The position numbers were made by a program, and so were the translations under genes. The notes under the pieces were generated by a model. That model saw nothing but the letters and a program-made list of their open reading frames with translations. It ran no database searches and was not told where the DNA came from. This document shows, one piece after another, positions 2,257 to 20,283 of a stretch of DNA of 64,000 bases; position 1 is the first letter of the stretch; every line of letters starts with the position of its first letter. The DNA lies in the IMG/VR virus record IMGVR_UViG_3300037042_002125, positions 1 through 64,000 of that record; one strand, 5' to 3'.

Positions 2257-2264
2257 GGAAAATA

Positions 2265-2705: not shown

Positions 2706-2707
2706 CT

Positions 2708-3480: not shown

Positions 3481-3505
3481 CTAATATAACAGGCTATAGT
3501 AAAAT
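3477..3505 (+). promoter_or_regulatory. sigma70-like promoter
   Basis: TTGACT-17 bp-TAAAAT upstream of ATG 3532. Confidence 0.7.
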
Positions 3506-3531
3506 AAACACTTATTAACAGAAAGCGTAAT

Positions 3532-3798: not shown

Positions 3799-4094
3799 TG
3801 GCATTATATACACCGGGTTTCGTCGTATCCGACGGCATCATTATAGGTATACCTTTTATCGAAAGTATTGATCTTCGCATTGAAGAAGGCGAAGAAATAA
3901 TTGATAAATTAAAAGGTGATGTCAAGTTTAATATAAGAACAACATCTGGAAAAGAATATACGTTGTCGATGTCTCAACATTTGGTCACATTGAAAGATTA
4001 TTCTATTCCTGCCAATGAAAAAGTATTGGGTCAGTCTATTTTAGAAAAATGGTGTCATGTTATGGAGAATAAATGTGGTAACCTTACCCGCTGA
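3798..4094 (+). CDS. hypothetical protein
   Basis: TGATG coupling. Confidence 0.7.
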   Translation: MALYTPGFVVSDGIIIGIPFIESIDLRIEEGEEIIDKLKGDVKFNIRTTSGKEYTLSMSQHLVTLKDYSIPANEKVLGQSILEKWCHVMENKCGNLTR

Positions 4095-4323
4095 TTTTGT
4101 TGCAACCAAATATACGGGATATTTCTGGAACTTAAAAGAACAGAAGCTCTACTCTATTAAGGTAGATGGCATTCTTAAGCCAATAAAGAAATATCCGCCC
4201 AATCAATGGAATCATTTTGTGGATGCATATAGAGTGTCTGTTAAAGGACATCGCCGTGCATTAATGATAGATTATCTAAAGAAACTCGTACCGTCGAATT
4301 CAGTTATACCATTGGAGAAGTAA
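4057..4323 (+). CDS. hypothetical protein (start may be slightly downstream)
   Basis: Packed ORF; GGAG inside 5' end suggests a later GTG start. Confidence 0.65.
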   Translation: MLWRINVVTLPADFVATKYTGYFWNLKEQKLYSIKVDGILKPIKKYPPNQWNHFVDAYRVSVKGHRRALMIDYLKKLVPSNSVIPLEK

Positions 4324-4566
4324 ATGAAGCAAGAAGGCAAATGCATTGTCGGTGACCCAATATCTGTTGATAGCTACACAGCAGATTGGATATCAGTAAA
4401 ATTACATCCTACCATGTTTTACCGCCGCCTAAATGAAATCCAAAAAGGATTCAAATCGGTAAAGGGGCTTTATGCCGAACTCGACATGGGACAATATGTT
4501 GTCCTACGTTTTTCTGAAAAGGATGATGTTACAGCATTCTATAAGCGACATCATATGTATGTATAA
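4324..4566 (+). CDS. hypothetical protein
   Basis: GGAG RBS, abuts neighbours. Confidence 0.7.
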   Translation: MKQEGKCIVGDPISVDSYTADWISVKLHPTMFYRRLNEIQKGFKSVKGLYAELDMGQYVVLRFSEKDDVTAFYKRHHMYV

Positions 4567-5174
4567 TGGACAAATCTCTATACACTGACGAATTTAGGAC
4601 ATTTAAGTTCTTACAGTTTTCGCCTAGTGCTGTAGACTATTATAAGAAAACGACAAAAATATTAAATGGTATACGACCGGAAGACCAGGTAGATAATCCC
4701 GATTTTGTATGGAAGTGTCGTGTCGAGTTTGTAGAGCAATTAATGGATTTTAGAGATAGCTCGCTGCATATAGTCGAGCAACCGAGTCCAAGTAGTAGTC
4801 AGGTAACATTTAAGAACGAACTTATACTACAATACGAGGATGCACGCATATACACGTTAGATAATCCCGTAATCTTCTATGGCCATCCTTTGATGCCTGC
4901 CACAAGAAGATTAGCAGAAGGAAGTGATATATCCGAGATAGAGGATGAAGACAGAATACCCAAATATTATTTATGTTCCGAAGAATATATGATTTCTGTC
5001 AATTTATTAGATAGCAGGATCTTCCCAATTTATCACCCTGGGTTGATAAGATCGGCAACAATAGAAAATTCTTTATTTACTGCTATATTTTATGATAAGG
5101 AATGGGCCGAGAAGTTCCAGAAAGCTTTAACTAAATATTTTAGAAAGAATTCTTCTACTAGCTCAGCATTATAG
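4566..5174 (+). CDS. hypothetical protein
   Basis: TAATG coupling, 202 aa. Confidence 0.75.
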   Translation: MDKSLYTDEFRTFKFLQFSPSAVDYYKKTTKILNGIRPEDQVDNPDFVWKCRVEFVEQLMDFRDSSLHIVEQPSPSSSQVTFKNELILQYEDARIYTLDNPVIFYGHPLMPATRRLAEGSDISEIEDEDRIPKYYLCSEEYMISVNLLDSRIFPIYHPGLIRSATIENSLFTAIFYDKEWAEKFQKALTKYFRKNSSTSSAL

Positions 5175-5217
5175 GGGTTGTAGTAATCTTAACATAAATA
5201 CATCAATAAGGAGTATT

Positions 5218-5466
5218 ATGCACCCTTTTCTAGATGCAAGTAAATTAACGGACGAAGAAATAATTGAACGATTAGGTCGAGCATATACATATATGAACGC
5301 TCAAGTAATGTTAGGACATAATCCTACTGTTCATAGTATCAAAGAAGTAATACAGACATTAGAGGATGTTCGTTTAGAGAGGCAACAAAAGAGTTCAGAA
5401 GATGAATTTAATAAGAAGTATCCTGATAAAAATAAGCCACTCGAATTAGGAAAATTAGATGATTAA
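5218..5466 (+). CDS. hypothetical protein
   Basis: ATAAATA box and GAG-rich RBS upstream. Confidence 0.75.
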   Translation: MHPFLDASKLTDEEIIERLGRAYTYMNAQVMLGHNPTVHSIKEVIQTLEDVRLERQQKSSEDEFNKKYPDKNKPLELGKLDD

Positions 5467-6172
5467 AAAAGGACGCCATCTTATCAAAAGTCATATGACG
5501 TTGGAATATGACTTTACAGGTATTAGGATACGAGATAGTGATCTAATACCCGTAGACTGGAAATTAACTATTGATCTTGTTGCTACCGGAAAAAAAGGTA
5601 AGGCAAAAGAACTCGTAGAATATGACGCAAGCATAACGTATCAAAAGATTTATTTTTGGTTAGATACGAATTTACCAAATATCGTAGTAGTGAATGTAAA
5701 TAATGAAGACGATCTGTATATTGCTAATTTATCGAGCAATATAATGATGTATTGCCCAGATACACCTAACGACGATATGCTTATACAGTTGTTACATTCT
5801 AAGATATCGGCATTAGCATTTCCTAATTTAATGGTGGGAGAGATACATTTAAAAGCAAGTGATACAGCACTCCAATATACATACGATTGCACAGACGGTA
5901 ATTATATACTTCCTATGACAACATCTGAGTATTATGCAGAAGGTACTACTCGCGATAAGATACCTTGGTGGATAAGAGATGACGGATTTTGTTTCGAATT
6001 TGTTAAGCCTCTTGATAATAAATTGACAGACGAAGAACTATTCAAGGATATAGTTGATCCAATGAGCGAGTTTCATCGTATTGTGACAGAAGTAGCAGAA
6101 ATACCTATGAGCATACTAAATGAGCCTGCCAGAATTGTACAGATAGAAAAATGGAAACCAAAGAAAGTTTAA
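5459..6172 (+). CDS. hypothetical phage protein
   Basis: 237-aa ORF overlapping neighbours. Confidence 0.75.
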   Translation: MIKKGRHLIKSHMTLEYDFTGIRIRDSDLIPVDWKLTIDLVATGKKGKAKELVEYDASITYQKIYFWLDTNLPNIVVVNVNNEDDLYIANLSSNIMMYCPDTPNDDMLIQLLHSKISALAFPNLMVGEIHLKASDTALQYTYDCTDGNYILPMTTSEYYAEGTTRDKIPWWIRDDGFCFEFVKPLDNKLTDEELFKDIVDPMSEFHRIVTEVAEIPMSILNEPARIVQIEKWKPKKV

Positions 6173-6684
6173 GAACTAATCTATATGGACAAGCCATACT
6201 CTCTGATACTGACCTCAGAGAGTTGCTACTCCAGGGAAAGAATATAAGTCATTTAAATGTTATATTCAATGAAGAGGTAGATTTATTCAAACAGTATCAA
6301 TCAATGTTACTGCCCGAAACTATTACATTTTTAGATGCCCCTGAGGAGAAGTTAACATTTGATGAGTTCCATCACAAATGTGCAGACGAATGGATATTTC
6401 CAATTATCTATCAGCAAATAGATGTACGTGCGTGGTTATATGATAAATGTACGACACAAGAAGAAATAAATAGAGTAGACGAAGAGTATCTACTTTACGA
6501 GGAACGAGAATTGATTATGCTACTAAGACTATTCATCTTTCTCATTGATTATATGAGAAAGAATAAATTTGTTTGGGGTGTTGGCAGAGGTAGTTCTACT
6601 AGTTCTTATATATTATATTTGATAGGTACACATCGTATTAATTCGATAAAATATAATTTAGATATAAGAGATTTTTTAAAATAG
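6151..6684 (+). CDS. short DnaE (DNA polymerase III alpha)-like fragment
   Basis: R..EE..L...GVGRGSS.SS..LYLIG.H.I.SIKY.L...FL matches DnaE palm region; ends before the PDxD catalytic motif. Confidence 0.8.
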   Translation: METKESLRTNLYGQAILSDTDLRELLLQGKNISHLNVIFNEEVDLFKQYQSMLLPETITFLDAPEEKLTFDEFHHKCADEWIFPIIYQQIDVRAWLYDKCTTQEEINRVDEEYLLYEERELIMLLRLFIFLIDYMRKNKFVWGVGRGSSTSSYILYLIGTHRINSIKYNLDIRDFLK

Positions 6685-6702
6685 TTTTTATAAGGAAAAG
6701 AT

Positions 6703-7029
6703 ATGGCTCGACATGTATCATACAGAGGTGCGACAATAGATATGGAATCTCTAAGTCGCGAAAATGAAAAGATTCCTGCAATTGGTAATATGAAGGTTAA
6801 CGCAAGGGGCGACCAAATTAATCGCGGCGTAATAACAAAAACAGCAGATCAAATAGCAAGAGATAATCATCGCGTTCAAACTATTATTACAAATACGGGG
6901 TTAAAAGGTAAACAGCCTATTGTACCCGATATTCAAATGGAAGCACCTAAGGCGCCTAAAGCAGTTAAGACACCTAAAGTAGCATCTAAAGAAACCGAGT
7001 TACCTTCTGGTGATATTATAGTAGAATAA
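6703..7029 (+). CDS. hypothetical protein
   Basis: AAGGA RBS, 108 aa. Confidence 0.75.
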   Translation: MARHVSYRGATIDMESLSRENEKIPAIGNMKVNARGDQINRGVITKTADQIARDNHRVQTIITNTGLKGKQPIVPDIQMEAPKAPKAVKTPKVASKETELPSGDIIVE

Positions 7030-7030
7030 T

Positions 7031-7204
7031 ATGGACGGCGATATCGAGGGAAATGTGAATGGTGTGAAATACACCATAGGCAAGGCCGTCTTGGAACAAC
7101 TGAAATTGCATAATATTGATGCAGTAAAAGAAGTGGAAGAAGCATTAAATACATTAATTAAAGAAGAAAGGCCTACAGATGCAAATCAAAGCAATGCCCG
7201 GTAA
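7031..7204 (+). CDS. small hypothetical protein (57 aa, below ORF-track cutoff)
   Basis: Manual translation MDGDIEGNVNGVKYTIGKAVLEQLKL...; fills the gap before GroES. Confidence 0.55.
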   Translation: MDGDIEGNVNGVKYTIGKAVLEQLKLHNIDAVKEVEEALNTLIKEERPTDANQSNAR

Positions 7205-7523
7205 AGTACTGGTAACAGATTTAGAACGCGGTTCTAGACTTATAAATGGAATTATTATTCCAGATGATAATGGTAAGAGCGAAGGCATTCGCCCTCGCTG
7301 GGGCCGGGTATATTCGATTGGCGAAGGTATCGATGAAATTTCTGTTGGACAATGGATATTGGTCGAGAATGGTCGCTGGACTCGCATGTTAAAGATAAGA
7401 GAAGACGATGGCACCTATATACAGGTATGGGGTGTAGAATGGCCTAAGTCTGTTATGCTTGTATCGGACGAAGATCCTGATATGAATATATTTTCTGAAT
7501 TTACCACATCACACGCATTTTAG
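7179..7523 (+). CDS. groES: GroES-like co-chaperonin
   Basis: IKAMPGKVLV..GIIIPD..GRVYSIGEG..VGQWIL pattern of Cpn10. Confidence 0.8.
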   Translation: MQIKAMPGKVLVTDLERGSRLINGIIIPDDNGKSEGIRPRWGRVYSIGEGIDEISVGQWILVENGRWTRMLKIREDDGTYIQVWGVEWPKSVMLVSDEDPDMNIFSEFTTSHAF

Positions 7524-7543
7524 GCCTGCATTAGCCGAAAGTC

Positions 7544-7572
7544 TTGCATAGCATGCCTTACTATGCTATTAT
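7544..7572 (+). promoter_or_regulatory. sigma70-like promoter
   Basis: TTGCAT-17 bp-TATTAT with TG extension. Confidence 0.55.
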
Positions 7573-7593
7573 TTGTCAATTAAGAAAGAACAT

Positions 7594-8532
7594 ATGAAGA
7601 ATCTGTGGACAGAAGTATATAGACCCAAGACGATAGGAGACTATGTCTTCAAAGATCAAAAACAAAAGAAACAAATAGAGAAGTGGATAGAGAGTGGTGC
7701 ACTTCCACATATCTTGTTGTCAGGGTCTCCGGGTACGGGTAAATCAACCTTAGTGAAAGTTCTGTTAAATGAACTAGGCGTAGATCCTTTTGATGTATTA
7801 GAAGTAAACGCATCTAGGGATAACGGTGTAGATTTTATTAGAGATACTATTACTCGATTTTCTGAAACAATGGGTGTGGGAGATATAAAGTATATATTTC
7901 TAGATGAAGCAGACGGTCTTTCGGCGCCAGCACAGGGTATTTTGAGAGGCACATTAGAAAAGTATGCAGGATCTGTAAGATTCTTACTTACATGTAATCA
8001 TCCACACAAGATTATAGATGCGATTAAATCCAGATGTGAAATTGGTCGTATGCATATAGAGAAATTAGATACAAGCGAATTTTATATGCGATTGGTTAAT
8101 GTGCTGGATAAAGAAAACGTCGAAATTGACCCAGATGCATTAGAAGCTATAGTACAGAAGACATATCCCGACCTACGCCGCGGGATTAGCATGATTCAGG
8201 CTAATTCCTTCAATGGAAAGCTAAATTCTCCCGACGCAGACTCTGAGGTTGTATCCGATTACAAGACTGATATGGTAGTGTTATTCAAGGCAGGTAGATA
8301 TACAGATGCTCGTAAGCTGATATGCGAAAAAATCAGTAAAGACGAATATGATGATGTATATACATTCATGTATAAGAATTTAGAAATTTGGAGTGAAAAT
8401 GATATAGAACAGAGTAGACTGATTATTGCAATTAGAAATGGATTAATCAATCATACTATGTGTTCTGATATTGAATTAAATCTTAGTGCAACTTTATGTG
8501 AACTTGAAATGATTTCGAAAGGTATTTTATGA
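7594..8532 (+). CDS. sliding clamp loader (RFC small subunit / T4 gp44-like AAA+)
   Basis: WTEVYRP, GSPGTGKS Walker A, LDEAD Walker B, SRC motif; ATG 7594 preferred to TTG 7573. Confidence 0.93.
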   Translation: MKNLWTEVYRPKTIGDYVFKDQKQKKQIEKWIESGALPHILLSGSPGTGKSTLVKVLLNELGVDPFDVLEVNASRDNGVDFIRDTITRFSETMGVGDIKYIFLDEADGLSAPAQGILRGTLEKYAGSVRFLLTCNHPHKIIDAIKSRCEIGRMHIEKLDTSEFYMRLVNVLDKENVEIDPDALEAIVQKTYPDLRRGISMIQANSFNGKLNSPDADSEVVSDYKTDMVVLFKAGRYTDARKLICEKISKDEYDDVYTFMYKNLEIWSENDIEQSRLIIAIRNGLINHTMCSDIELNLSATLCELEMISKGIL

Positions 8533-8885
8533 GTAAAGAAAAAGTTTTTATCGTGTTATCTCACAAACATAATTTAAAGAAGGGTTCTAGAACAGAGTGG
8601 GAAGTTGCAGAATCTGTAGAATTTGTTAATCAGTTAAGAAATAAGCATATCACTATGTCTAGCGCAATCGGCGATTATCTTAATAGAAAGATGATAAGCG
8701 GCGAAAGTAAAGGAATGGGCGATTATGCAAAGTTCGAAGAATATGTATGGAAGAAGTATTCTAAGCAAATGACAGAACTCGAGACTGCCTATAATGCATT
8801 ACGTGTTCCAGAAATTGTCATACCCGAAACAATGATTACTGATTCTTTCGGTAACGTAAGACCACATACGGTATTTGATATATGA
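8529..8885 (+). CDS. hypothetical protein
   Basis: ATGA coupling. Confidence 0.75.
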   Translation: MSKEKVFIVLSHKHNLKKGSRTEWEVAESVEFVNQLRNKHITMSSAIGDYLNRKMISGESKGMGDYAKFEEYVWKKYSKQMTELETAYNALRVPEIVIPETMITDSFGNVRPHTVFDI

Positions 8886-9487
8886 TTAAAGAGAAGATTA
8901 TCTTAACAGATTGCGACGGAGTACTCTGCAACTGGAACGACGGTTTTAATAAGTTCATGGAAGATAAAGGTATGCCACAATTACCCAATACGGATGATCA
9001 ATATCTATTATCGAAAAGGCACAATATTACTTCTGCATATGCTACAGAACTCGTCAGGGAATTTAATGAAGGCCCGAGTATTGCTGATTTGGAACCATTT
9101 GCTGATTCCGTAGAATATGTAGCCCGACTCTCAGATAAAGGTTTTAGATTTATTGTTGTCACAAGTCTTAGTGATGCGCCACATGCCCATTATTATAGAT
9201 CAAAGAATCTGCACAGTATTTTCGGTAGTCATGTATTTAAAGAAATCAATTGTATTGAAATGGGTGCAAGCAAAGCGCATATTTTAAAAAATTGGCAAGA
9301 TACGGGATATTTCTGGATTGAAGATCACATGCGTCAGGCAGAGGCTGGATATGAAGCTGGCCTACAAACAGTATTAATTAGACATCCATATAACGCACAT
9401 TACACAACTGATTTATTTCCAACAGTAAGTTACGAAAGACCGTGGGAAGAAATATATAATATGGTATGTAAGGAGTATAATTTATAA
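8882..9487 (+). CDS. HAD-family phosphatase (5'(3')-deoxyribonucleotidase-like)
   Basis: DCDGV motif I, VVTS, K, IEDH. Confidence 0.85.
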   Translation: MIKEKIILTDCDGVLCNWNDGFNKFMEDKGMPQLPNTDDQYLLSKRHNITSAYATELVREFNEGPSIADLEPFADSVEYVARLSDKGFRFIVVTSLSDAPHAHYYRSKNLHSIFGSHVFKEINCIEMGASKAHILKNWQDTGYFWIEDHMRQAEAGYEAGLQTVLIRHPYNAHYTTDLFPTVSYERPWEEIYNMVCKEYNL

Positions 9488-10212
9488 TGCTTATAAACGT
9501 ATTTTCATTGCATCGCACTGGATCTACCTGGTGGGCACATTATATTAAAAATCAATACCCTGGTAGTAAAATATATAATGAAATATTTAATCAGCTATGG
9601 TATTTTACTATTAATGAGAACGGAAGTTTTACATGGCACAACGAATATAGCGACGGATGCTTCTGGAGAGCACCAAATGCTTCCTGCACAGAAATTGTGC
9701 ATAATTACAGAGAACTTGCAACCAAGGATAATCTTAGATTCGACAGATGGTTAAAATTCTTAGAATTATCTACAGATACAATTATTTGCCATACTCATCT
9801 TTCACCCCTACAAGATGATAAGTATCTTACAGAATTATGCAAGATAGGTAATAAGAACTATTATGTCTATAGAGAAAATATCTTAGAGAAAATAGCATCT
9901 TTCGTAATATTAGAACATACAGGTGAATATACAGTATTTACTAAAGATAGAGCTAATATTAATGTAAAATTTACATATCCTATTATTAACATGAAATCAA
10001 CAGAATGGAAGATATATGAAATATTACATGCTAATGAATTCATAGAAAATAAATTATTTAATTATGAAAGAATTAAATATGAATTTATGCCATTCAACGA
10101 AACAATAGAGGGAATGCCACTAAAACAAAATGTGTCAGCATTCGACAGATTGTGCATTATAGATCAAGAATTAATAAAACAAATATATACAAGGACAAAA
10201 AATGGCAGGTAA
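9487..10212 (+). CDS. sulfotransferase-like protein
   Basis: N-terminal HRTGSTW 5'-PSB loop, NEIF, YREN....AS 3'-PB-like motif, KYE. Confidence 0.65.
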   Translation: MLINVFSLHRTGSTWWAHYIKNQYPGSKIYNEIFNQLWYFTINENGSFTWHNEYSDGCFWRAPNASCTEIVHNYRELATKDNLRFDRWLKFLELSTDTIICHTHLSPLQDDKYLTELCKIGNKNYYVYRENILEKIASFVILEHTGEYTVFTKDRANINVKFTYPIINMKSTEWKIYEILHANEFIENKLFNYERIKYEFMPFNETIEGMPLKQNVSAFDRLCIIDQELIKQIYTRTKNGR

Positions 10213-11056
10213 AATTTTAATAATGGGCCTACCAGGGTCTGGCAAAACAACACTCGCAATAGCACTTAAGAAGTATTTAGAAGATAATGGTACCGCAAAC
10301 AACATGTCATTATCTAATGCGATGACTACTGACATGCTTATCGGTGATTATAAGGTCACCGTTGACTGGTTCAACGCTGATGAAATTCGTAAACGCTTCA
10401 ACGACTGGGACTTCAGCCAAGACGGCCGTATCAGACAATCGCTACGCATGGCAGAGTTCGCCCTGAAATCATCAGGTGATTTTGTTATCGCTGACTTTGT
10501 TGCACCGCTAGTGGAGATGCGAAATAACTTTAAGGCAGACTGGACTATCTGGATGGATACTATCGATCAAGGTCGTTTCGATGATACAAACAAAGCATTC
10601 GTACCACCCACTATATATGACTTCCGTGTCACTGAACAGAACGCAGACAAGTGGGCCGAGTTTATTGGTACACATATTCTTGAAAATCGGCGCCGCCCAG
10701 TGTTTAATTGGCAAAAAGAAACTGTTATGCTACTAGGAAGATATCAGCCTTGGCATCAAGGGCATAGGGCATTATTTGATATTGCTATTGCTAAAACAGG
10801 GCAGGTAATTGTACAGATACGAGATTGTCAGGGTTGGAACGGTAGCAATCCTTTTACTCTTAAACAAGTGGCAGACTATATTAGACGAGATCTCGACCCC
10901 TTATATCAGGGCCAGTATGAAATACAAATTGTGCCCAACATTGTTGAAATTAATTATGGACGCGACGTGGGCTATAAAATAAACAAAATAGATCTTCCAG
11001 ATGAGATACAACAAATATCTGCTACTAAAATTCGTAAGGATATGGGTATAGAATAA
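10202..11056 (+). CDS. cysC: adenylyl-sulfate kinase-like P-loop domain fused to HxGH nucleotidyltransferase domain
   Basis: GLPGSGKT, NADEIR, DFVAP, F..P; C-terminal GRYQPWHQGH and ISATKIR. Confidence 0.8.
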   Translation: MAGKILIMGLPGSGKTTLAIALKKYLEDNGTANNMSLSNAMTTDMLIGDYKVTVDWFNADEIRKRFNDWDFSQDGRIRQSLRMAEFALKSSGDFVIADFVAPLVEMRNNFKADWTIWMDTIDQGRFDDTNKAFVPPTIYDFRVTEQNADKWAEFIGTHILENRRRPVFNWQKETVMLLGRYQPWHQGHRALFDIAIAKTGQVIVQIRDCQGWNGSNPFTLKQVADYIRRDLDPLYQGQYEIQIVPNIVEINYGRDVGYKINKIDLPDEIQQISATKIRKDMGIE

Positions 11057-11104
11057 AATTGTTGGGACGATGGCACAATGATAAATACATTAAGGGAGAA
11101 ATGT

Positions 11105-11245
11105 ATGGACTCATTTGTATATCAATGGACTAATTTAACATTAGATAAAATTTATATAGGATTTCATAAAGGGACAGAAGGTGATGGATACATTTGTTCA
11201 TCGGCATCTTCTATCTTCTGGGAAGATTTTCGTAATCCCAGTAGC
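11105..11245 (+). pseudogene. truncated GIY-YIG (Seg-like) endonuclease N-terminus
   Basis: FVYQWTN...KIYIGFHKG...DGYICSS then runs into the microsatellite (PSS x7). Confidence 0.7.
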
Positions 11246-11299
11246 CCCAGTAGCCCCAGTAGCCCCAGTAGCCCCAGTAGCCCCAGTAGCCCCAGTAGC
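11237..11299. repeat. 7 x CCCAGTAGC tandem repeat at the compositional junction
   Basis: Direct count; minus strand encodes (GAT)n collagen triplets. Confidence 0.97.
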
Positions 11300-11353
11300 C
11301 CCATCAATCCCTGCTGGCGCAGCATTGATGATTGTGTTTAGGTTTTTGGACAT
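11237..11353 (-). pseudogene. truncated 5' end of a collagen-like gene ([23 protein letters not shown]...)
   Basis: ATG at 11353 just after the previous stop; frame stops about 12 codons past the repeat, in AT-rich DNA. Confidence 0.7.
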
Positions 11354-11356: not shown

Positions 11357-11731
11357 TTATTCCGGGTTTGCGGGTAATTCCACCCAAGATACTGTTGATT
11401 CATCCCATTGATATTGTTTGCCGTCCTCTGGGTAGGAGGCTGGAGGCTCCCACAAACACGATTCTTCGTTAAGCAGCCATGAGTCAAACGGTTTTGGAGC
11501 TATGAACGCATCACGGACGGCATCGTAGGTATATCCGACACCAGCGTAGTTCTTTCGGAAGTTTCCGTTGTAGCTTGTCTGTTTCCAGTTGGAATATCCA
11601 CCCGACCAATTTGTCAGGAACTCAATTCCCTTGGCCTCAGACTCAACTCCGTTGTCGAGTAATTCGTTGTTGTTCAAACAATTAACATCAACGACGATAT
11701 TGTTCGCGTCGAGTTTTGCAAAATGTGCCAT
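11357..11731 (-). CDS. tail-fibre-associated small protein
   Basis: MAHFAKLD..WKQTSYN.NFRKNYAG.GYTYD..RDAFI.PKPF.SW type usually found after Gly-rich fibre genes. Confidence 0.7.
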   Translation of the reverse strand: MAHFAKLDANNIVVDVNCLNNNELLDNGVESEAKGIEFLTNWSGGYSNWKQTSYNGNFRKNYAGVGYTYDAVRDAFIAPKPFDSWLLNEESCLWEPPASYPEDGKQYQWDESTVSWVELPANPE

Positions 11732-11739
11732 GTTGATTC

Positions 11740-14562
11740 CTAGAAAGTAATGGAGCCGTTGCCGGTCCATGTATAGATGCGATAACCACCTGATACGGTT
11801 ACCGTGGGGGAGCCTGTGGTTGCAGATGCGGCTGCATAACTGTCTGCATAACGGATGACTACTACGCCAGAACCCCCGGTTCCCCCTGTTCCTCCATTAT
11901 TAGCGCCGCCCCCACCACCACCGGTATTTGTTGTGCCGGAATATCCGTTGGCGCTTGACGAGACTGCCCCACCATTACCGCCACCACCTAACCCCCCAGT
12001 TCCCGGAGTTCCTGATGCGTAGCAGGTTCCGGCGCCGCCACCTGCATAATAAGTTGCAGTTCCAGATATAGAGGATTGTAATCCAACTCCGCCATTTCCG
12101 CCTTGTCCTGTTGATGCATTACCTCCAACAGCACCGGCGCCGCCGCCGCCACCTGATGGATATGGATTTGTACTTGCACTAGTTCCCCCGGTATTTCCTT
12201 GCCCCGATGTTCCAGCGCCGCCTGCATTAACGCCCCATGATGATCCGCCACCACCAGAACCGCCAGGTTGACCAACTCCCCCATTGCCAGTACCACCCCG
12301 GCCACCACCAATTGCAGTAATATCTGCCCAATTATTTGCACCGTCTGTAGTATCAGTCAAAATAGTTGCTGTTTGCGTGTCATTTGTACTATCTTTGTTA
12401 TAGTATAAAAATACTTTGTAACTAGTTCCCCCAGTTAATGAGACAGTTTCTGAATATATTACAGTATCACTAGTATCAGTGATAGAGAATACAATTGATG
12501 CTCCTGTTTTAGTTGCCCTAAGTCTAAATGGTGTGCTAGCGGCTAAACCTGCATAGGCGTAATTAATTAATTTTCTGGCTAATGCCGTGCCATACGCTGC
12601 ATATTGTGCATATTCTACCGCCTGTGTAAATGTATTGGCATTAGTGTTATTAAGACCAATACCTAGATATCCAGCATTAGTGGGGCGTGTTCCTGAAATT
12701 TGAACTTTGAAATCAAAGTTGGCACTAGCAGAAGTAAATATATCCGACACTACATAATTATTTGGAGATGGAGCATTAACTAACGTTAACGGAGGATGAG
12801 CTATTCCTAATGAAGAATTACTTCCATTGTTTGCCACGGTTGTAGACGAATTACCAGCACCTCCGGCTCCTATAGTAATTCTATAACCAATACCAGCAGT
12901 AACAGCAGTAGTAGTAAAATATCCACCCGCACCACCACCCCCTGATGGTTCTGCATAACCACCAGAACTGCCCCCACCTCCCGCCACGATAAGGCATTCA
13001 ACAGCAGGAGGACGCTCAACAGCTGCAACCGTCCAAGTAAATGTCCGGGTGGCAGTCTTGTTGGTAGTCGCAGTAGCAGCCGTGATGACGCTTGCTCCGC
13101 TGCTGATTGTCGTGGGTGCCCCGGTGATCTGATCGCCGCTGATGCTCACCCCCGCAGGAAGGGTGTCGGCTGAGTACGAAATCGTCCCTCCCGTTGCCGA
13201 AGCTGCAACCAGCGTGATCGCGCTCATGGCCGTGCTTTGCCCCAGTAAATAGGCGGTGCCATCAGCAGGGCTTGTCCAAGTCACCACATCGGGATTGACG
13301 GTGATTGAGAAACTGCGGTTTGTGGTCTGGTTCTGTGCGTCAACGGCCTTGATGACAAAGCTGTAGGTTGTCGAGCTTGCAGTTACAGCGTTGGTCCCGC
13401 TTATCAGGCCGGTGGAACTGTTCAGTGTGATGTTGGTTGGTAGAGAACCCGAAACGACCGAATAGGTTACTGGCGCATCACCTGTGGCAGCAAGCGTTGT
13501 GGATACCGCACCAGTCTCATAGGACGCTCCAAGGGTTCCAGCTGCCGTTGTCCAAGCGGGTATACCGCTGTACGAGATACCCGGAACTGCGATGGCCGTT
13601 GCACCGTCTGTATTGACAAGGTAGACCGGGTACGTTCCAGCGGCCACGGCTGGTGCAGTGAAGGTGATCGAGGTTGAGCTGACTACCGCCACCACGGATA
13701 CTGTGGTGAAAGGCGAGGTTCCAATCAGAAGTGAAGCCCCTGCTGCAAAGCCAGTGCCGACCAAGGTGACAGTCTCTCCACCAGCCACGTCTACGGCTGT
13801 CTCCGAACTGGGGTAGGTGATTCCCGTGATTTTGGGTACGTCTGCTCCTGCACCCGTAGCTCCAGTCGGGCCAGTAGGACCACCTGGAGTACCAGCGGCT
13901 CCAGTAGCACCAGTCAAACCCACCGTAGGCGTCTCGGCCACCTTCCAGTTGGATGTAGCGCCGATATAAACCAGCGGCACAAAGGCACCGTTGATGTTGA
14001 TGTTCAATCCAGTGCTTTCCCCCTCCACCGAACTTGCTCCAACCACCAGCACGTTATGAACCGCGCATTGGTTGGCAACGTCAAGGATTGAGATAAGAGC
14101 GCCGTCCACGCCTATAGGAAGGGTGATCGTGAATCCCCCAGCGGTTGAGTCCACCCGCACCAGATCGTTTGCCGCAGCCGTGTAGTTGGCCGTCTTGACT
14201 GCGGTTGGTGTGAGGCCGGAGCCACTTCCACCACTGCCAGCAGGGCCAGTTAAGCCGGTTGCACCTGTGGGACCTGTTACCGTAGAAGCAGCACCACCGG
14301 GTCCTGTCCAACCTGTGGGTCCTGTGACTGTGCTGGCTGCCCCGTTAGGACCTGTCCAGCCTGTGGGACCTGTTACCGTAGAAGCAGCACCACCGGGTCC
14401 TGTCCAACCTGTGGGTCCTGTGACTGTGCTGGCTGCTCCAGTGGGGCCTGTGACTGTGGAGGCTGCCCCGTTAGGACCTGTCCATCCAGTGGGACCTGTA
14501 ACCGACGGCCTGCCGTAGGTCGAAATTGCCCCAAGTCGTAAACCCGTTAAGGTTATTGCCAT
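11740..14562 (-). CDS. tail fibre/spike-like protein: collagen repeats, IPT/TIG and Ig-like domains, Gly-rich C-terminal domain
   Basis: GPT/GWT triplets, [27 protein letters not shown]...[10 protein letters not shown]. Confidence 0.8.
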
Positions 14563-14613: not shown

Positions 14614-17600
14614 TTACGGTATGAAGCGTTCTTCTAGATCGTGCAATCTTGCTTCCTGATCTTTTGCTATCTCGATCAAGAATGCCAGCAGAGGCAAGTA
14701 CGACACGGACTTCATGCCGTTTGCGTCATCCTTAACAAGCTCTGGCAATATCTTTTCAAGCTCTTGGGCGATCAAACCGTATGACTTATCCCCTGACTCT
14801 TTCCACGTAAAGGACACACCCATAAGACGTTTGATTGTCTCAATAGGATTCTGGAGCAACCGAATGTTTTCCTTATACCTTATGTCTGACGTCGTGTTCA
14901 GTATAGTTGAGTTGAGCGTGCCTGTTGATGGGTCAAACGTCAACTTGGTGCTAGACACATACGTATCTGCTTGAGTACCTGATGTTGCGCGCGTCATCCC
15001 AACGTACTGCGTAACCACAGTCGTTGTGTCGTTCGTGATCGTTACTGAGGTGCCTGCAGGACCCGTAACCGACGGCCCTGTCCAACCAGTGGGGCCTGTG
15101 ACTGTGCTGGCCGCTCCCTCAGGACCTGTCCAACCTGTGGGTCCTGTAACCGACGGCCCTGTCCAACCAGTGGGGCCTGTGACTGTGCTGGCCGCTCCCT
15201 CAGGACCTGTCCAACCTGTCGGTCCAGTAGGCCCTGTGACGGTCGATGCTGCCCCGTTGGGACCTGTCCAACCTGTGGGTCCAGTAACCGTAGAAGCAGC
15301 ACCACCGGGTCCTGTCCAACCTGTGGGTCCTGTGACGGTCGAGGCAGCACCGTTAGGTCCTGTCCAACCTGTGGGACCTGTTACCGACGGCCCTGTCCAA
15401 CCTGTAGGTCCAGTTACCGTAGAAGCCGCCCCTGTAGCGCCAGTAGGACCTGTGGGTCCTGTTACCGTAGACGCAGCCCCGTTAGGTCCAGTCCAACCTG
15501 TGGGTCCTGTGACTGTGCTGGCCGCTCCCCCGGGACCTGTCCAACCTGTGGGTCCAGTGACGGTCGAGGCTGCGCCTGTGGGTCCTGTTACCGACGGCCC
15601 AGTCCAGCCTGTAGGACCTGTAGGACCTGTGACGGATGGACCTGTCCAACCTGTAGGTCCTGTTACCGTAGAAGCAGCACCGTTAGGTCCTGTCCAACCT
15701 GTGGGACCTGTTACAGTAGACGCTGCGCCTGTGGGTCCTGTGACTGTCGATGCAGCGCCTGTAGCACCAGTGGGACCTGTGACTGTTGAGGCTGCACCAC
15801 CAGGCCCTGTCCATCCAGTGGGTCCAGTAACCGAAGGCCCTGTCCATCCAGTGGGGCCAGTTACGGATGGGCCAGTTACGGATGGGCCAGTAGGTCCTGT
15901 AATAGATACTATAGGTGTCTCAGCTACCTTCCAGTTTGTGCCGGTGCTGTTGTATACCAATACAACGTAAGCACCGCTGACGTTTGCAGACAGGCCAACT
16001 GCATCACCTTCAATGGTTTTGCCACCAGCAACCGCAATAAGCACTGGGTTCAAGCTACATTGGTTCGCAACGTCAAACAGACCAGCTCTATCACCATCTG
16101 AAGGAGAGGCTGGCAGTGTGATAGTAAACTCACCACCTGTACTATCTACTCGCACAACCTCATTCAATCCTACTGAATAAGCAGATGTCTTGATTGGAGT
16201 ATAGTTTACTTCGTAAGGACCTGTAGGGCCAGTAACTGAGGGACCTGTTGGTCCAGCAACGGTACTATCAGCTCCTGTTGGGCCAGTCAACGATGCTCCT
16301 GTTGGGCCAGTCAACGATGCTCCTGTTGGACCTGTGACAGAGGGGCCAGTCCAGCCAGTGGGACCTGTTACCGACGGACCTGTCCAACCTGTAGGTCCTG
16401 TGACTGTCGAGGCTGCCCCTGTAGCGCCAGTAGGACCAGCAACTAAGGCCACATTGTTGACGTAGAGACCAGAATTGTCTACCCTAATCCGCTCGCAGGT
16501 TCCAGCACCAAGCAACAGGGTACAGACGCAGCCAGCAGCACCGACCAAGGAGCCGATCACAGTGTTGTTAACACCTGTAGTAATCGCGTTACCCGCGTTA
16601 GCACCAATCGCTATGTTGTTACCTGTGGCGTTTGATGCGTACAAGGCGCAGCAACCGATACCGATATTATTATTACCTGTGGTGTTGCATGTTAGAGATT
16701 GAGATCCTTGAGCAATGTTGTTACAGCCTGTAGTATTACAGTAGAGCGCCGAGTATCCTTGGGCACTGTTGTTACAGCCTGTGGTGTTGGCGCATAACGC
16801 TGTGTTACCTTGAGCAATGTTGTTACAGCCTGTGGTGTTTTTCTTAAGCGCCATGTAGCCTACGGCCACGTTATTTGACCCAGCAGTGTTAGCTACTATG
16901 GCATTGTATCCAATAGCCGTGTTGTAGCATCCCGTGGTGTTACCGTATAGTGACCCATAGCCTAAGGCCACGTTACTCATGCCGTAAGTGTTAAACTTTA
17001 GAGCTTGTGATCCTATCGCCACATTAAAATGACCGGTAGTATTGCTACACAGAGTAAGACAGCCTGCCGCGAAATTGCGGCTACCTGTGGTATTCCCGTA
17101 CAGAGAACAGAAGCCGAAGGCGAAGTTACTGTAGCCAGTAGTTGTCTTGGCAAGAGCGCCTCGCCCAATTGCTACGTTATTCGAGCCATTGGTAATAGCA
17201 GCCAACGCACTAGCACCAACCCCAAAGTTATTGTAGGTGGCTGTGAGACTAGGATTACCAGTGAGTGCAACATTGTTGATGTAAAGGCCACTGTTATCAA
17301 CCCTTATACGTTCGCAGGTTCCAGCACCGAGGAGCAAGGTGCCTACACAACCTGCGGCTGCTGGTAGAGAACCAATAACAGTGTTATTGTTTCCAGTGGT
17401 TATGGCGCCACCCGCCCAGTAGCCTATGCCTATGTTACACGATCCAATCGTGTTCAGTCCGAGCGCGCAGTAGCCTTGGGCGATGTTATTGCAGCCTATT
17501 GTATTTTTGGCGAGACCGTAGGCTCCTATCGCAACGTTGTAGCTACCTGTGGTATTGCAACATAAGGCTATGAATCCGATGCTAGTATTGTATCCACCGA

Positions 17601-20283
17601 GCGTGTTGGCACGTAGTCCGAGGCAGCCTATAGCAATATTGTAGTCACCATGGGTGTTACCGTAGAGAGCCTTATTTCCTATTGCTATGTTATTACAACC
17701 AGTGGTGTTGGAGTATAACGCCATGTATCCTTGGGCGATATTGTCACTACCGTAGGTATTCTTGCAAAGGGCTGCGTACCCTATTGCAGTGTTGCTCATG
17801 CCTGTGGTGTTGGCGTAGAGTGCATTAAAACCTGACGCGAAATTATTACAACCAGTAGTGTTGCCGTAGAGTGTCTTGCAGCCGTGAGCAAAGTTGTTGC
17901 AACCAGTGGTATTCCCGTACAGAGCACAGAGGCCGAAGGCTGAGTTGTTACTGCCAGTAGTACTCTTGGCAAGAGCGCCTCGCCCAATTGCTACGTTATC
18001 ATGACCAATGGTAATAGCAGCCAACGCGCTTGTACCAATAGCCAGGTTGTTGTAGGTAGCACTTAGACTAGGATTACCAGTGAGTGCAACATTGTTGACG
18101 TAGAGACCACTGTTATCAACCCTAATCCGCTCGCAGGTTCCGGCACCTAGGAGGAGCGTACAGACGCAGCCTGCGGCTGCGGGTAGGTTTCCAATAACTG
18201 TGTTGTTAGCGCCTGTGGTTATACTCTTACCTGCAAACGCACCAATTCCGATGTTGCTACCAGCAGAATTTGCACCATAAAGAGAGCAAATTCCTATTGC
18301 AATGCTGCAACTGCCGGTGGTATTGTATCTGAGCCCATAGAATCCTATGGCAACGTTATTAGCGCCGGTGGTGTTCTTGTAGAGTGCCTTGTACCCTTGG
18401 GCAACGTTACTAGAGCCGTATATGTTACATGCAAGAGCTTGATATCCTTGAGCAAAGTTATCCCTACCTGCGGTGTTGCAATATAGGGACATGCATCCTT
18501 GGGCGAAGTTATTGCTACCAGTAGTTGTCTTGGCAAGGGCACAGACACCAATCGCAAGATTGTTAACACCTGTAGTTACTGAAGCCAACGCACCTGTACC
18601 AATAGCCAGGTTGTTGTAGGTAGCACTAAGACTAGGTGTTGCCCCCGTAGGGCCAGTGACAGAAGACCCACCTGGACCTGTCCAACCTGTGGGTCCTGTG
18701 ACTGTGCTGGCCGCTCCACCTGGACCTGTCCAACCAGTGGGACCTGTTACAGTAGACGCTGCACCAGTTGGGCCAGTGACAGTAGACGCAGCCCCTGTAG
18801 CACCAGTAGGGCCTGTTACTGTAGAATCAGCACCACCAGGTCCCGTCCAACCTGTGGGACCTGTGGCGGTGCTGGCTGCTCCAGTTGGACCTGTTACAGT
18901 AGACGCAGCCCCTGTAGCACCAGTAGGACCTGTGACGGTGCTGGCTGCTCCACCTGGACCTGTCCAACCTGTGGGACCTGTTACAGTAGACGCTGCACCA
19001 GTTGGGCCAGTTAACGACGCGCCTGTTGGGCCAGTCATGCTCGTCCACCCTTGGACAGTTGCAAGTTCAGCGTTGGTCAAGTGGTTGTATTCGTTGGCTA
19101 TCCCACCTTGCAGACCAGCAAGCAGATTGTGAGTTCCTATAGATACAGCCGTATTTGTAATGAGAGATGCGTTGATACGGACGGGCGTCCTCATCAGTGA
19201 GCATAAGCCTAGGCCAGCAGCATTTACCAGCCAAGTGAATTGATAGATGGCGACGAGTTCTTCTACAGGCGCACCGACCATTGAAAAGGAACCAAACGTT
19301 TCTGCGTAAGCTGTGGCGGTTGTAGTGAACAACGCACGACCTGGCACCCACATGAAGCACTCTTGGCCTTGAACGTTAGTACAGCACAGGTAGTAGTTGA
19401 CGTAACGATTCGAAGCAGCCGTAACTGCGGTCATTGTGCCTGCGTTGTCGTACTGGATACCACCAGCACCTGTGTACTTGAAGGGCACCAGACTACGCTG
19501 CCATTCCCAAGTGGACGCACCTGTGCGGTACATGATGGAGTAGAACAGATTCGATGTTGCGTTACCAGCAGTGACTGCAGGTAATGTTTCGTAAATGTCT
19601 TGATCGAAGATGTACGCGGTGCTAATTGCACACGTCTTATTAGCGTTGACGGCACTTGCTACTGTAGGGCCGGTAAGCACCGCACCACTAGAGTACTGAG
19701 TACCTTCTGTCAAGTGCTCGATCATCAAGTCACGCCGGGTTATCAAAACGGCATGGCGCTCCTCTGCCATAATGTACGTTGGTGTCAACCCAGAATTACG
19801 CGAGATTGTCACAATAGGTATTATGCTTGGGAGAGATAGGTCCCAAACAGTTGTGCTATATGACAACGTGCCGTCTGTTGCGTCGATGTAGATATAGTAC
19901 ATCGTTGTCGTCGCAGTTGCATTAGGCAAAGCGAGGGTCTTGCTGCCTGTTACGGTGTACTTTACGCCTGCACGATAGTAAGACCAAGGATTTGACCCAC
20001 CAGCGGTTGGTGCAATCGTGAAAGTACCGATGAATGGGGTTGTGCCCACAGCATCGGCAAAAGAAATCGTGGTTTCAGTTTGGTTCAGAAAACCGCACAT
20101 CTGAGTGTCTACGCGAGCTGCATCAGCATTTGCGCCTTGAGCTGCTGACGCGTAATCTACACCGGCTGTAGCCGCACTAAGGGCGCCAGCAGTTAACTTT
20201 GCCAAGCCACTTAGGGCTGTGTCGAGGGTTGTGTTGCCGAGGACGACTAGGCCATTTTTGGCCTTAAAAGGGACGTTTGCCAT
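14614..20283 (-). CDS. long tail fibre with collagen repeats, Cys-rich NTTG/NxAIG repeats and C-terminal intramolecular chaperone (peptidase S74)
   Basis: [28 protein letters not shown]; start placed at [11 protein letters not shown]. Confidence 0.88.

What the first reader, a model, noticed from the sequence alone, without database searches (positions are those of the whole stretch)
11105..11353. Head-on junction of two different genomes at a 9-bp microsatellite
Seen: a plus-strand GIY-YIG gene and a minus-strand collagen-like gene are both cut off at (CCCAGTAGC)x7. GC content, coding strand and promoter style all switch here. Inference: chimeric assembly or template switch via CCCAGTA microhomology; less likely a real recombinant. 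Cross-junction gene-neighbourhood claims are unsafe.
Basis: partly seen in the sequence, partly recalled or inferred. Interest (0 to 1): 0.6.

Follow-up and report, generated by a model that had tools for sequence, protein, structure and literature searches.

The report
Real deletion scar, misassembly next door
The head-on join at the 9-bp microsatellite is most likely a genuine deletion scar inside a low-GC jumbo phage, while the true mis-join of this 222-kb contig lies 2.3 kb further right, where a 13.5-kb tail from that phage is hooked onto the 208-kb circular genome of a second phage.

Summary
(CCCAGTAGC)x7.4 at 11237-11303 separates a homing-endonuclease gene cut after codon 45 from a collagen-like gene cut after 39 codons. 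GC and coding strand switch there.

The join is not a one-off chimera:
- A contig from a second JGI metagenome spans it with the same 67-bp tract.
- Two further independent assemblies, one apparently from an unrelated ENA dataset, carry the left flank running into the tract.
- Homology to the intact endonuclease gene stops at 11238, and only CC is shared with the tract, not CCCAGTA.

The contig is chimeric, but elsewhere. Its last 127 nt equal window 13541-13667 exactly, and 127 is the largest metaSPAdes k in the JGI workflow. The record is therefore a lariat: a 208,411-bp circle (phiRSL1-like phage, GC 0.47) plus a 13,540-bp tail.

The tail belongs to a PA5oct/G001-like low-GC jumbo phage, strain B1. 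Its sibling strain B2 has a GC-richer, convergent collagen gene block at the same locus.

Best reading: an illegitimate deletion within B1 ending at the microsatellite. I could not map reads, so coverage and pair support remain untested. Interest is low to moderate.

The parts
1..11238 (+). Low-GC (0.33-0.39) replication and nucleotide-metabolism block of jumbo phage strain B1. Genes: abhydrolase, MazG, dCMP deaminase, PolIII-alpha-like fragment, gp44-type clamp loader 7573-8532, NT5C 8882-9487, a 241-aa ORF unique to B1 at 9487-10212, and the kinase.
   Evidence: Pfam and PHROGs annotation. It is 90-96% nt identical and colinear with G001:116857-128978. It is 99.98-100% identical to Logan SRR11849211_31517, which runs 20 kb further upstream in low-GC sequence. 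The clamp loader's best isolates are PA5oct-like phages at 50% aa.
10202..11056 (+). P-loop kinase / cytidylyltransferase-like gene (284 aa), the last intact gene of the low-GC block.
   Evidence: phrog_10255, E 2.4e-46. A 79% aa copy lies in the circle at about 207731-208570. The exact protein is also found on Logan and ENA contigs that end in the tract.
11105..11238 (+). 5' fragment (about 45 codons) of a homing-endonuclease gene. The ORF then reads on through the tract as (P-S-S)n to a stop at 11341.
   Evidence: One base differs from L005-L009, L172 and L173 up to 11238. All seven continue as an intact 211/220-aa gene. phrog_314.
11237..11303 (.). Perfect microsatellite (CCCAGTAGC)x7.4, which is (Gly-Ala-Thr)n on the minus strand. 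Its left edge is the breakpoint; CC at 11237-11238 is the only overlap with the endonuclease gene.
   Evidence: The same tract occurs as (GAT)n inside collagen-like ORFs in 7 other IMG/VR contigs.
11198..11353 (-). 5' fragment of a collagen-like gene: 16 unique residues, then G-X-Y triplets to 11237. The last 12 codons and the stop are antisense endonuclease sequence.
   Evidence: The start is tightly coupled to the stop of the upstream 137-aa gene. No intact homologue was found.
11357..11770 (-). phrog_7759 protein (137-aa ORF; JGI aa, 11357-11731), a gene commonly found after fibre genes.
   Evidence: phrog_7759, E 4e-46. In 54 of 80 related loci it sits beside a homologue of the 940-aa protein. 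There is no homologue in the 208-kb circle. The exact protein is on the junction-spanning contig of the second sample.
11740..13540 (-). Tail-specific 3' part (about 600 codons; Gly_rich_2, He_PIG) of a fibre-like gene. The annotated 940-aa ORF 11740-14562 is probably an assembly hybrid.
   Evidence: Pfam. This stretch is only paralogous to the circle: 88% over 141 bp and 74% over 104 bp.
13541..13667 (.). 127-nt exact repeat identical to the last 127 nt of the 222,078-bp record. This is the graph vertex where the 13.5-kb tail enters the 208,411-bp circle, and so the real inter-genome join.
   Evidence: JGI uses metaSPAdes with k = 33, 55, 77, 99, 127.
13668..14562 (-). 5' part of the circle phage's fibre-like gene X. 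Joined across the closure to 221951->220934, it gives an intact ORF of about 679 aa.
   Evidence: a 691-aa stop-to-stop frame across the closure. Paralogy is shown.
14614..64000 (-). Start of the 208,411-bp circular-mapping genome of the GC 0.47 phage. It continues to base 222078 of the record, outside the window, and carries fibre genes, an SNF2 helicase and virion genes.
   Evidence: Its PolA, clamp loader and RecA lie at 194-207 kb. PolA's best hits are BCSR5, Motura and phiRSL1 at 37-39% aa.

Best explanation
The 222-kb record is a lariat-shaped metaSPAdes path. It consists of a circle of 208,411 bp (window 13541 to record end, GC 0.47) and a 13,540-bp tail (window 1-13540). The circle is a phiRSL1/Motura-like jumbo phage with its own PolA, clamp loader and RecA.

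The tail comes from a different, co-occurring phage that I call strain B1. B1 is a low-GC PA5oct/G001-like jumbo phage. Tail and circle meet in a fibre-like gene where both phages share at least 127 identical bases.

The microsatellite junction lies inside the tail and is a real feature of B1's DNA. In this lineage the low-GC, plus-strand replication block ends after the kinase module. It faces a GC-richer, minus-strand collagen/fibre block. In B1, an illegitimate deletion or recombination with 2-nt (CC) overlap joined codon 45-46 of a homing-endonuclease gene to the distal edge of the (Gly-Ala-Thr)n tract of a collagen-like gene. That removed the 3' parts of both genes and whatever lay between them, including the DUF2061 gene that follows the kinase in all relatives.

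Shown: the lariat topology, the recurrence of the joint, the intact endonuclease allele in relatives, and the native convergent GC-richer block in sibling strain B2.

Inferred: that 11304-13540 belongs to B1 rather than to a variant of the circle phage; that the event was a deletion; and that the repeat tract favoured the break.
For: 1. Lariat topology. The last 127 nt of the record equal 13541-13667 exactly, and the next base differs. 127 is the largest k of the JGI metaSPAdes workflow. Closing the circle restores an intact fibre-like ORF of about 679 aa.

2. Recurrence of the joint. JGI 3300037485 contig Ga0393267_0042398 (1,854 bp) spans window 10827-12680 with the identical joint, an identical 67-bp tract and 3 SNPs. 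Logan SRR11849211_31517 and ENA ERZ4201063 NODE_10691 (cov 4.5) both run from the kinase through ...CGTAATCC into the tract. They stop after 30 and 55 nt of it, close to the word size of each assembler (31 is the tool's stated Logan index word; 55 is my assumption for a default SPAdes run).

3. No graph shortcut at the microsatellite. No 15-mer is shared between 1-11238 and the rest. A 67-bp tract is shorter than k = 77, 99 or 127.

4. The tail's low-GC part is a separate phage.
   - It continues 20 kb upstream in low-GC sequence colinear with G001.
   - It is 99.5% identical over 20 kb to strain B2, whose JGI contig is 164.8 kb.
   - G001 (166 kb) and G003 (223 kb) are uniformly GC 0.32-0.41 and share only about 20 ORFs with the circle, at 22-58% aa.
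   - Three B1 proteins tested were on record in 5 of 6 cases in the ERZ4201063/ERR3856787 and SRR35119656 data. Four proteins from the high-GC side (one in the tail, three in the circle) were on record in 0 of 8.

5. Native module boundary. In B2 the order is NT5C, kinase, DUF2061, followed by a convergent block of GC 0.44-0.53. That block holds three 210-226-aa genes and a collagen-like gene of at least 1,723 aa. Both the JGI and the Logan contig cross this boundary.

6. Intact ancestral-type allele. Seven contigs carry the identical left flank and continue as a full endonuclease gene followed by conserved low-GC genes.

7. The tract is native to collagen genes. In 7 other contigs it reads (GAT)n in frame. 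Collagen-like repeats have been proposed as recombination hot spots in phages, and a spontaneous deletion spanning one is described (PMC7242381).

8. Segment 11304-13540 has no counterpart in the circle beyond short paralogy. Its tetranucleotide profile falls below the 5th percentile of circle windows (r = 0.21).
Against: - Coverage of tail versus circle and pair support at both sites are therefore unknown.
- The assignment of 11304-13540 to B1 rests on topology and on one 1.85-kb contig from a sibling sample of the same project. Index hopping between sibling libraries cannot be excluded for that contig.
- In the ENA and SRR35119656 data, which hold B1, the 124-aa gene to the right of the tract is not on record. 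The same look-up also misses it in Logan SRR11849211. That run yields contigs 99.99-100% identical to both parts of this record, so it is probably the source run, and this absence is weak evidence.
- No intact version of the collagen-like gene was found anywhere.
- The tetranucleotide profile of 11357-13540 also differs from the low-GC block (r = 0.14).
- Whether vertex 13541-13667 has a second outgoing edge is unknown without the assembly graph.
- That this particular sample was assembled with the published workflow is inferred from the 127-nt overlap.
Confidence: 0.62

Rival explanations
1. One real hybrid molecule. A phiRSL1-like phage genome, or a variant of it, physically carries at least 31 kb of PA5oct/G001-like DNA joined at the microsatellite. 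The 127-nt repeat is then just an intragenomic paralogue repeat at which the assembler stopped.
For: The joint is read-supported and recurs in a second sample that also contains the high-GC phage. The path from tail to circle was accepted by metaSPAdes. The two lineages do exchange genes: the kinase-DUF2061 module is 79-85% aa identical between them. The fibre genes on both sides of the closure are paralogous.
Against: - The circle closes exactly at k = 127 and restores an intact gene without the tail.
- The low-GC phage occurs in other datasets where three tested circle proteins are not on record.
- B1 is a 99.5% sibling of a strain with a 165-kb low-GC contig.
- A hybrid would carry two replication systems and two clamp loaders.
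- A hybrid would have at least 240 kb.
Confidence: 0.12
2. The microsatellite join itself is an artefact, either an in-vitro chimera (template switch or ligation) or an assembler mis-join through the repeat, between two genomes that are not physically linked there.
For: There is a sharp GC, strand and lineage switch at the tract. Both genes are truncated. Chimeric contigs were under 5% of contigs of 10 kb or more in virome assembly benchmarks (PMC5610896). One IMG/VR contig (L180) ends inside such a tract.
Against: - The same joint and tract length appear in a second metagenome with SNPs nearby.
- The left flank plus tract appears in Logan and ENA assemblies, one apparently from an unrelated dataset.
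- No k-mer of 15 nt or more is shared across the joint, and only CC overlaps.
- JGI libraries are unamplified, reads are filtered at a minimum count of 2, and k reaches 127, which exceeds 67.
Confidence: 0.06
3. Recurrent graph artefact. B1 and the other phage each own a (CCCAGTAGC)n tract with different partners, and the assembler hops between them in every sample where both occur.
For: The left flank plus tract is seen without the right flank in two assemblies. The full joint is seen only in samples that hold both phages.
Against: - A collapsed tract would be about k long: roughly 55-63 or at least 126 nt for the JGI k values, not 67 (inference).
- Four or more units of this exact tract occur in only 7 of 2.9 million IMG/VR contigs, so two unrelated co-occurring phages sharing it by chance is unlikely.
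- B1 would still need a truncated endonuclease gene abutting a collagen tract, which is the same kind of scar.
Confidence: 0.05

Closest known systems
Chimeric contigs in virome and metagenome assemblies (Roux et al. 2017, PMC5610896)
   Same: One contig contains DNA of two phages, joined where they share an identical stretch as long as the assembler's k (127 nt at 13541-13667).
   Different: The join is not where composition changes most visibly. The path is a lariat, a complete circle plus a tail, rather than two fragments end to end.
SPAdes circular contigs recognised by a k-long overlap of their ends (own knowledge of the assembler; k values from the JGI workflow paper)
   Same: The last 127 nt repeat an earlier 127-mer exactly, and closing the circle restores an intact gene.
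   Different: The repeat partner is internal (13541), not at base 1. End-repeat checks therefore miss it and IMG/VR lists the record as linear.
Deletions and recombination at collagen-like repeats of phage and virophage fibre genes (S. thermophilus phage Sfi21 and Guarani virophage, as discussed in PMC7242381; Duplessis and Moineau 2001, as cited in PMC5601072)
   Same: A G-X-Y coding repeat marks the endpoint of a rearrangement in a fibre-type gene.
   Different: Those cases are in-frame repeat losses or domain swaps that keep a working gene. Here the collagen gene is fused antisense to an unrelated gene and destroyed.
Seg-type (GIY-YIG) homing endonuclease genes of T4-like phages (own knowledge)
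   Same: A free-standing endonuclease gene lies between conserved genes. It is present in some close relatives and absent in others. The N-terminal motif pattern and the C-terminal repeated DNA-binding-like motifs of the intact relative also fit.
   Different: Pfam GIY-YIG was not hit. Only 45 of 211 codons remain, so no activity is expected.
PA5oct-like and phiRSL1-like jumbo phages
   Same: The tail's clamp loader is 50% identical to that of PA5oct-type phages. The circle's PolA is 37-39% identical to those of BCSR5, Motura and phiRSL1, whose genomes are 221-231 kb.
   Different: Both are distant, uncultured freshwater relatives. No megablast match was found in 50,697 phage records.

Membership tests
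   GC 0.36 versus 0.47; tetranucleotide r = 0.16 against at least 0.63. PA5oct-like versus phiRSL1-like marker genes.
   No shared 15-mer between 1-11238 and the rest. Only CC is common to the intact endonuclease gene and the tract.
   The full joint is in JGI 3300037485. The left flank plus tract is in Logan SRR11849211 and ENA ERZ4201063.
Lariat (tail plus circle) de Bruijn contig | The contig end repeats an internal site over exactly the assembler's largest k | tested here: met
   127 nt exact, 13541-13667 equal to the last 127 nt. JGI k = 33, 55, 77, 99, 127.
Lariat (tail plus circle) de Bruijn contig | Closing the circle gives intact genes and a plausible genome size | tested here: met
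   An ORF of about 679 aa is restored across the closure, and the circle is 208,411 bp. Relatives are 221-231 kb.
Lariat (tail plus circle) de Bruijn contig | The tail belongs to another genome | tested here: inconclusive
   1-11238 clearly belongs to strain B1, a separate jumbo phage. The assignment of 11304-13540 is inferred from the recurring joint and the lack of a counterpart in the circle.
Lariat (tail plus circle) de Bruijn contig | A coverage step and read pairs supporting both entries into the shared vertex | not testable with these tools
GIY-YIG (Seg-like) homing endonuclease gene | Recognised GIY-YIG catalytic domain | tested here: not met
   No Pfam hit for the fragment or for the intact 211-aa relative. 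No PDB sequence match.
GIY-YIG (Seg-like) homing endonuclease gene | Profile membership in a phage homing-endonuclease family | tested here: met
   phrog_314, E 1.3e-12 for the intact relative and 5.9e-4 for the fragment; phrog_655, E 3e-4.
GIY-YIG (Seg-like) homing endonuclease gene | Complete reading frame | tested here: not met
   Homology ends after codon 45-46 of 211.
GIY-YIG (Seg-like) homing endonuclease gene | Patchy presence among close relatives at the same locus | tested here: met
   Present after the kinase in L004-L009. Absent in G001 and strain B2.
Collagen-like phage fibre gene | A run of G-X-Y triplets in frame | tested here: met
   G-I-D plus (G-A-T)x7. Pfam Collagen scores 21.5 bits, below the 27.2 cut-off. 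Thirteen PHROG families matched, mostly tail-fibre or tail families.
Collagen-like phage fibre gene | A complete gene with a distal domain | tested here: not met
   The ORF ends 12 codons after the tract, inside antisense endonuclease sequence.
Illegitimate deletion or recombination scar | Both abutting genes are truncated, with at most a few bases of overlap | tested here: met
   CC only.
Illegitimate deletion or recombination scar | Intact alleles of the broken genes exist in close relatives | tested here: inconclusive
   Met for the endonuclease side, with seven contigs. No intact version of the collagen-like gene was found.
Illegitimate deletion or recombination scar | The same joint occurs in independent samples of the population | tested here: met

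The most novel reading that the evidence does not exclude
The record is one physical molecule. It would be a natural hybrid in which a phiRSL1-like jumbo phage has captured 30 kb or more, including a second replication module, from an unrelated PA5oct-like jumbo phage. The capture would have happened by illegitimate recombination at a collagen microsatellite. The hybrid would persist in the lake population across samples.
Probability: 0.08. Interest if true: 0.75.

Novelty: new member of a known kind. Interest (0 to 1): 0.25.

Why it matters
For users of the record: a public IMG/VR entry listed as 'linear, 93% complete' is probably a complete 208.4-kb circular-mapping genome with 13.5 kb of another phage hanging on it. 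Genes in the first 13.5 kb would be credited to the wrong virus. These include MazG, dCMP deaminase, a gp44-type clamp loader, the kinase and part of a fibre gene. The annotated 940-aa fibre protein is probably a hybrid of two phages.

For method: the most eye-catching compositional break was not the mis-join. An internal match to the contig's last k bases located the real one. That check is cheap and general.

For biology:
- A perfect coding microsatellite in a collagen-like gene marks the endpoint of a natural rearrangement in a jumbo phage.
- The locus after the kinase is a variable slot for GC-richer collagen/fibre cassettes. G001/G002, B1 and B2 each carry something different there.
- Two unrelated jumbo phages in one lake share at least 127 identical bases in a fibre gene. 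This hints at recent module exchange and perhaps a common host.

Tried and rejected
- Megablast of either side against 50,697 phage records found no match.
- An exact right-flank pattern in viral contigs found none.
- A degenerate pattern for the collagen N-terminus in metagenome contigs found none.
- The left-flank pattern in metagenome contigs found only two contigs, both with the intact endonuclease allele.
- A pattern from the 127-mer in viral contigs found none.
- A homologue search with the 51-aa collagen fragment returned only generic G-X-Y hits.
- A homologue search with the 940-aa protein, meant to recover a full-length gene X or an intact collagen gene, gave relatives of 57% identity or less with other N-termini.
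- The last look-up, on the 127-aa Peptidase_S74 product next to the vertex, found only the own contig.
- My first working model was that the 11.2-kb piece was grafted on at the microsatellite and that the orphan collagen N-terminus continued into the far end of the contig. I abandoned it.
- I considered a single-genome reading in which the high-GC part is simply the rest of the low-GC phage. I rejected it because G001 and G003 are low-GC throughout and lack the circle's PolA.
- I tried to explain the tract length by k-mer collapse. 67 nt does not fit k = 33, 55, 77, 99 or 127.
- Promoter and terminator scans gave nothing usable.

Full report
**1. The observation**

The window is the first 64 kb of a 222,078-bp IMG/VR record (JGI 3300037042, Ga0393277_0000004).
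- TRF finds a perfect (CCCAGTAGC)x7.4 at 11237-11303.
- To the left, all genes are on the plus strand and GC is 0.33-0.39. To the right, genes are on the minus strand and GC is 0.41-0.60. No other low-GC stretch exists in the remaining 211 kb.
- The plus-strand ORF starting at 11105 has 45 residues of a homing endonuclease and then reads the tract as P-S-S repeats.
- The minus-strand ORF starting at 11353 has 16 unique residues, then G-X-Y triplets through the tract, then 12 codons of antisense endonuclease sequence and a stop.
- The label 'GIY-YIG' is only an inference from motifs. Pfam does not hit the fragment or an intact relative. PHROGs places the relative in phrog_314, 'homing endonuclease'.
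- A change of 'promoter style' could not be substantiated.

**2. The left side**

- Window 1-9489 is colinear with, and 90-96% identical to, the interior of a 166-kb low-GC contig, G001.
- Window 11040-11238 differs at one base from seven other contigs (L005-L009, L172, L173). In all seven the endonuclease gene continues intact (211/220 aa) and is followed by conserved low-GC genes: DUF2061, a 119-aa gene, PhoH, DnaJ and Clp.
- Similarity stops between 11238 and 11239. The intact gene reads CC-TCTAT where the window reads CC-CAGTAGC. The overlap is therefore two bases, not CCCAGTA.
- The clamp loader's nearest isolates are PA5oct-type jumbo phages at 50% aa.

**3. The right side**

- The bulk of the record encodes its own family-A DNA polymerase, clamp loader, RecA-like protein and a second kinase-DUF2061 pair.
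- The polymerase is closest to those of Burkholderia phage BCSR5, Achromobacter phage Motura and Ralstonia phage phiRSL1, whose genomes are 221-231 kb.
- The tetranucleotide profile of 1-11236 correlates at 0.16 with the rest, against at least 0.63 for 36 windows of the rest. It correlates at 0.95 in raw frequency with non-homologous G001 sequence.

**4. The turn: the joint recurs**

Exact-protein look-ups in other public assemblies changed the picture.
- The window's kinase is also on Logan contig SRR11849211_31517 (31.4 kb) and on ENA contig ERZ4201063 NODE_10691 (6.7 kb, cov 4.5). Both run through ...CGTAATCC into the tract and stop after 30 and 55 nt of it. A 67-nt period-9 repeat would end contigs built with words of about 31 and 55 in just this way; the 55 is my assumption for a default SPAdes run.
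- The 124-aa gene product to the right of the tract, and the 53-aa ORF that JGI called across the tract, are both on a 1,854-bp contig of a second JGI metagenome (3300037485, Ga0393267_0042398). That contig spans window 10827-12680 with the same joint, the same 67-bp tract and three SNPs.
- No 15-mer is shared between 1-11238 and the rest of the record, so no de Bruijn shortcut exists at this site.
- The JGI workflow uses unamplified libraries, a minimum k-mer count of 2 and metaSPAdes with k = 33, 55, 77, 99, 127. A 67-bp tract is then bridged by real read k-mers.

A one-off chimeric molecule, a PCR template switch and a repeat collapse at this spot are all unlikely.

**5. Where the contig really is chimeric**

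- The last 127 nt of the record are exactly window 13541-13667, and the next base differs. Since 127 is the assembler's largest k, the path returned to a vertex it had already visited.
- The record is therefore a circle of 208,411 bp (13541 to the end) with a 13,540-bp tail (1-13540).
- Closing the circle joins 14562->13541 to 221951->220934 into an intact fibre-like ORF of about 679 aa.
- The fibre genes at the far end are paralogues of those at 11.7-20 kb.
- The tail-specific segment 11304-13540 has only short paralogous matches in the circle. The phrog_7759 gene has no match there at all.
- The annotated 940-aa protein is thus probably a hybrid of two phages' genes.

**6. The tail's owner**

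- The low-GC sequence continues 20 kb upstream of window base 1 in the Logan contig, colinear with G001.
- The record starts at base 1 because of a strain bubble. Another contig of the same assembly (Ga0393277_0002815) is identical upstream and carries an 89.6% allele of window 1-710.
- A sibling strain, B2, is 99.5% identical over 20 kb. It sits on a 164.8-kb JGI contig (3300036985) and a 33-kb Logan contig.
- G001 (166 kb) and G003 (223 kb) are uniformly GC 0.32-0.41. They lack the circle's polymerase and share only about 20 ORFs with it, at 22-58% aa.
- Three B1 proteins were on record in 5 of 6 tests in the ERZ4201063/ERR3856787 and SRR35119656 data. Four proteins from the high-GC side (one tail gene, three circle genes) were on record in 0 of 8.

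The low-GC phage is therefore an independent jumbo phage and not part of the circle.

**7. Why GC and strand switch at the tract**

In strain B2 the order is NT5C, kinase, DUF2061. A convergent minus-strand block of GC 0.44-0.53 follows. It holds three 210-226-aa genes and a collagen-like gene of at least 1,723 aa. Both the JGI and the Logan contigs cross this boundary, where all genes are complete. A GC-richer, convergent collagen/fibre block after the kinase module is therefore native to this lineage. G001 and G002 carry other genes at that position, so the locus is variable.

**8. Mechanism proposed**

In B1 a deletion or other illegitimate recombination joined endonuclease codon 45-46 to the distal edge of the (Gly-Ala-Thr)n tract of the first gene of the convergent block. 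It used a CC overlap. The 3' parts of both genes and the intervening DUF2061 were lost.
- The endonuclease remnant is still identical, apart from one base, to intact alleles, so the event is recent.
- The same exact tract occurs in frame in collagen-like ORFs of seven other viral contigs.
- Collagen-like repeats have been proposed as recombination hot spots in phages, and a spontaneous deletion spanning one is described.
- That the tract itself promoted the break is inference.

**9. What remains open**

- I could not map reads. Depth of tail versus circle, pair support at the vertex and direct tract-spanning reads are untested.
- The only full-joint replicate comes from a sibling sample of the same project.
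- The assignment of 11304-13540 to B1 is inferred.
- No intact copy of the collagen-like gene was found.
- A single hybrid molecule is not excluded. I give it about 0.1.

**10. Verdict**

The feature is a real but ordinary rearrangement scar at a module boundary of a low-GC jumbo phage. It sits on a tail that an assembler attached to another phage's complete genome 2.3 kb away. Its value is mainly curatorial and methodological, with modest biological interest.

Noticed in passing
window 13541 to record base 222078 (outside the window beyond 64000): With the 13.5-kb tail removed, the record is a circular-mapping genome of 208,411 bp (GC 0.466) belonging to a phiRSL1/Motura-like jumbo phage. IMG/VR lists it as linear and 93% complete, because the repeat partner of the contig end is internal.
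   Followed up: yes
window 10202-11056; record ~207523-209092 (L170 15511-17092): The kinase-DUF2061 module occurs in both phage lineages at 79-85% aa. G001's kinase is closer to the circle's copy (85%) than to B1's (80%). The circle also has a separate 165-aa APS-kinase-like gene just upstream. The module evidently moves between otherwise unrelated jumbo phages.
   Followed up: partly
window 1-710; L211 9139-9848 (Ga0393277_0002815): A second contig of the same assembly carries an 89.6% allele of the abhydrolase region, with identical sequence upstream. This two-strain bubble explains why the record starts at base 1.
   Followed up: yes
L187 9396-9977, L191, L194, L216 1-549: An HNH_3 endonuclease gene sits directly upstream of window base 1 in strains B1 and B2 but is absent at that site in G001. 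It is another mobile endonuclease polymorphism in this phage.
   Followed up: no
window 9487-10212: A 241-aa ORF lies between NT5C and the kinase. It is present only in strain B1, is absent in G001, G002 and B2, and has no Pfam or PHROG hit. The ENA variant L183 carries an indel that splits it.
   Followed up: partly
L216 13029-18200 (minus strand): Strain B2 carries a collagen-like gene of at least 1,723 aa made of S-G-W-S-G-T-S-G-type triplets. It runs off the contig end. JGI gene calls there are off-frame fragments.
   Followed up: partly
window 11164-11325 (minus) and 11740-14109: The public gene calls around the junction are unreliable. A 53-aa ORF is called across the tract in a Leu-Gly-Leu frame, the fibre gene is called as 789 aa, and the end of the 1908-aa ORF is called as a separate 127-aa Peptidase_S74 gene.
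   Followed up: no
window 5459-6684: The low-GC block encodes short ORFs (237 and 177 aa) matching only a piece of a PolIII-alpha-type polymerase (PF07733; phrog_11127). This suggests a split or fragmented polymerase gene in this lineage.
   Followed up: no
window 14614-20340 and 23854-26124; record 217415-220810: Very large fibre genes (1908, 756 and 1132 aa) carry long, near-perfect internal repeats of period 48-177 bp and an intramolecular chaperone domain (Peptidase_S74). They are paralogous across the circle closure.
   Followed up: partly
L198, L199 (Logan ERR12084952, ERR12084954): Relatives of the circle phage at 94-97% nt identity occur in sequencing runs with different accession prefixes, probably from another study. 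The high-GC phage lineage is therefore not confined to the JGI sample series.
   Followed up: no
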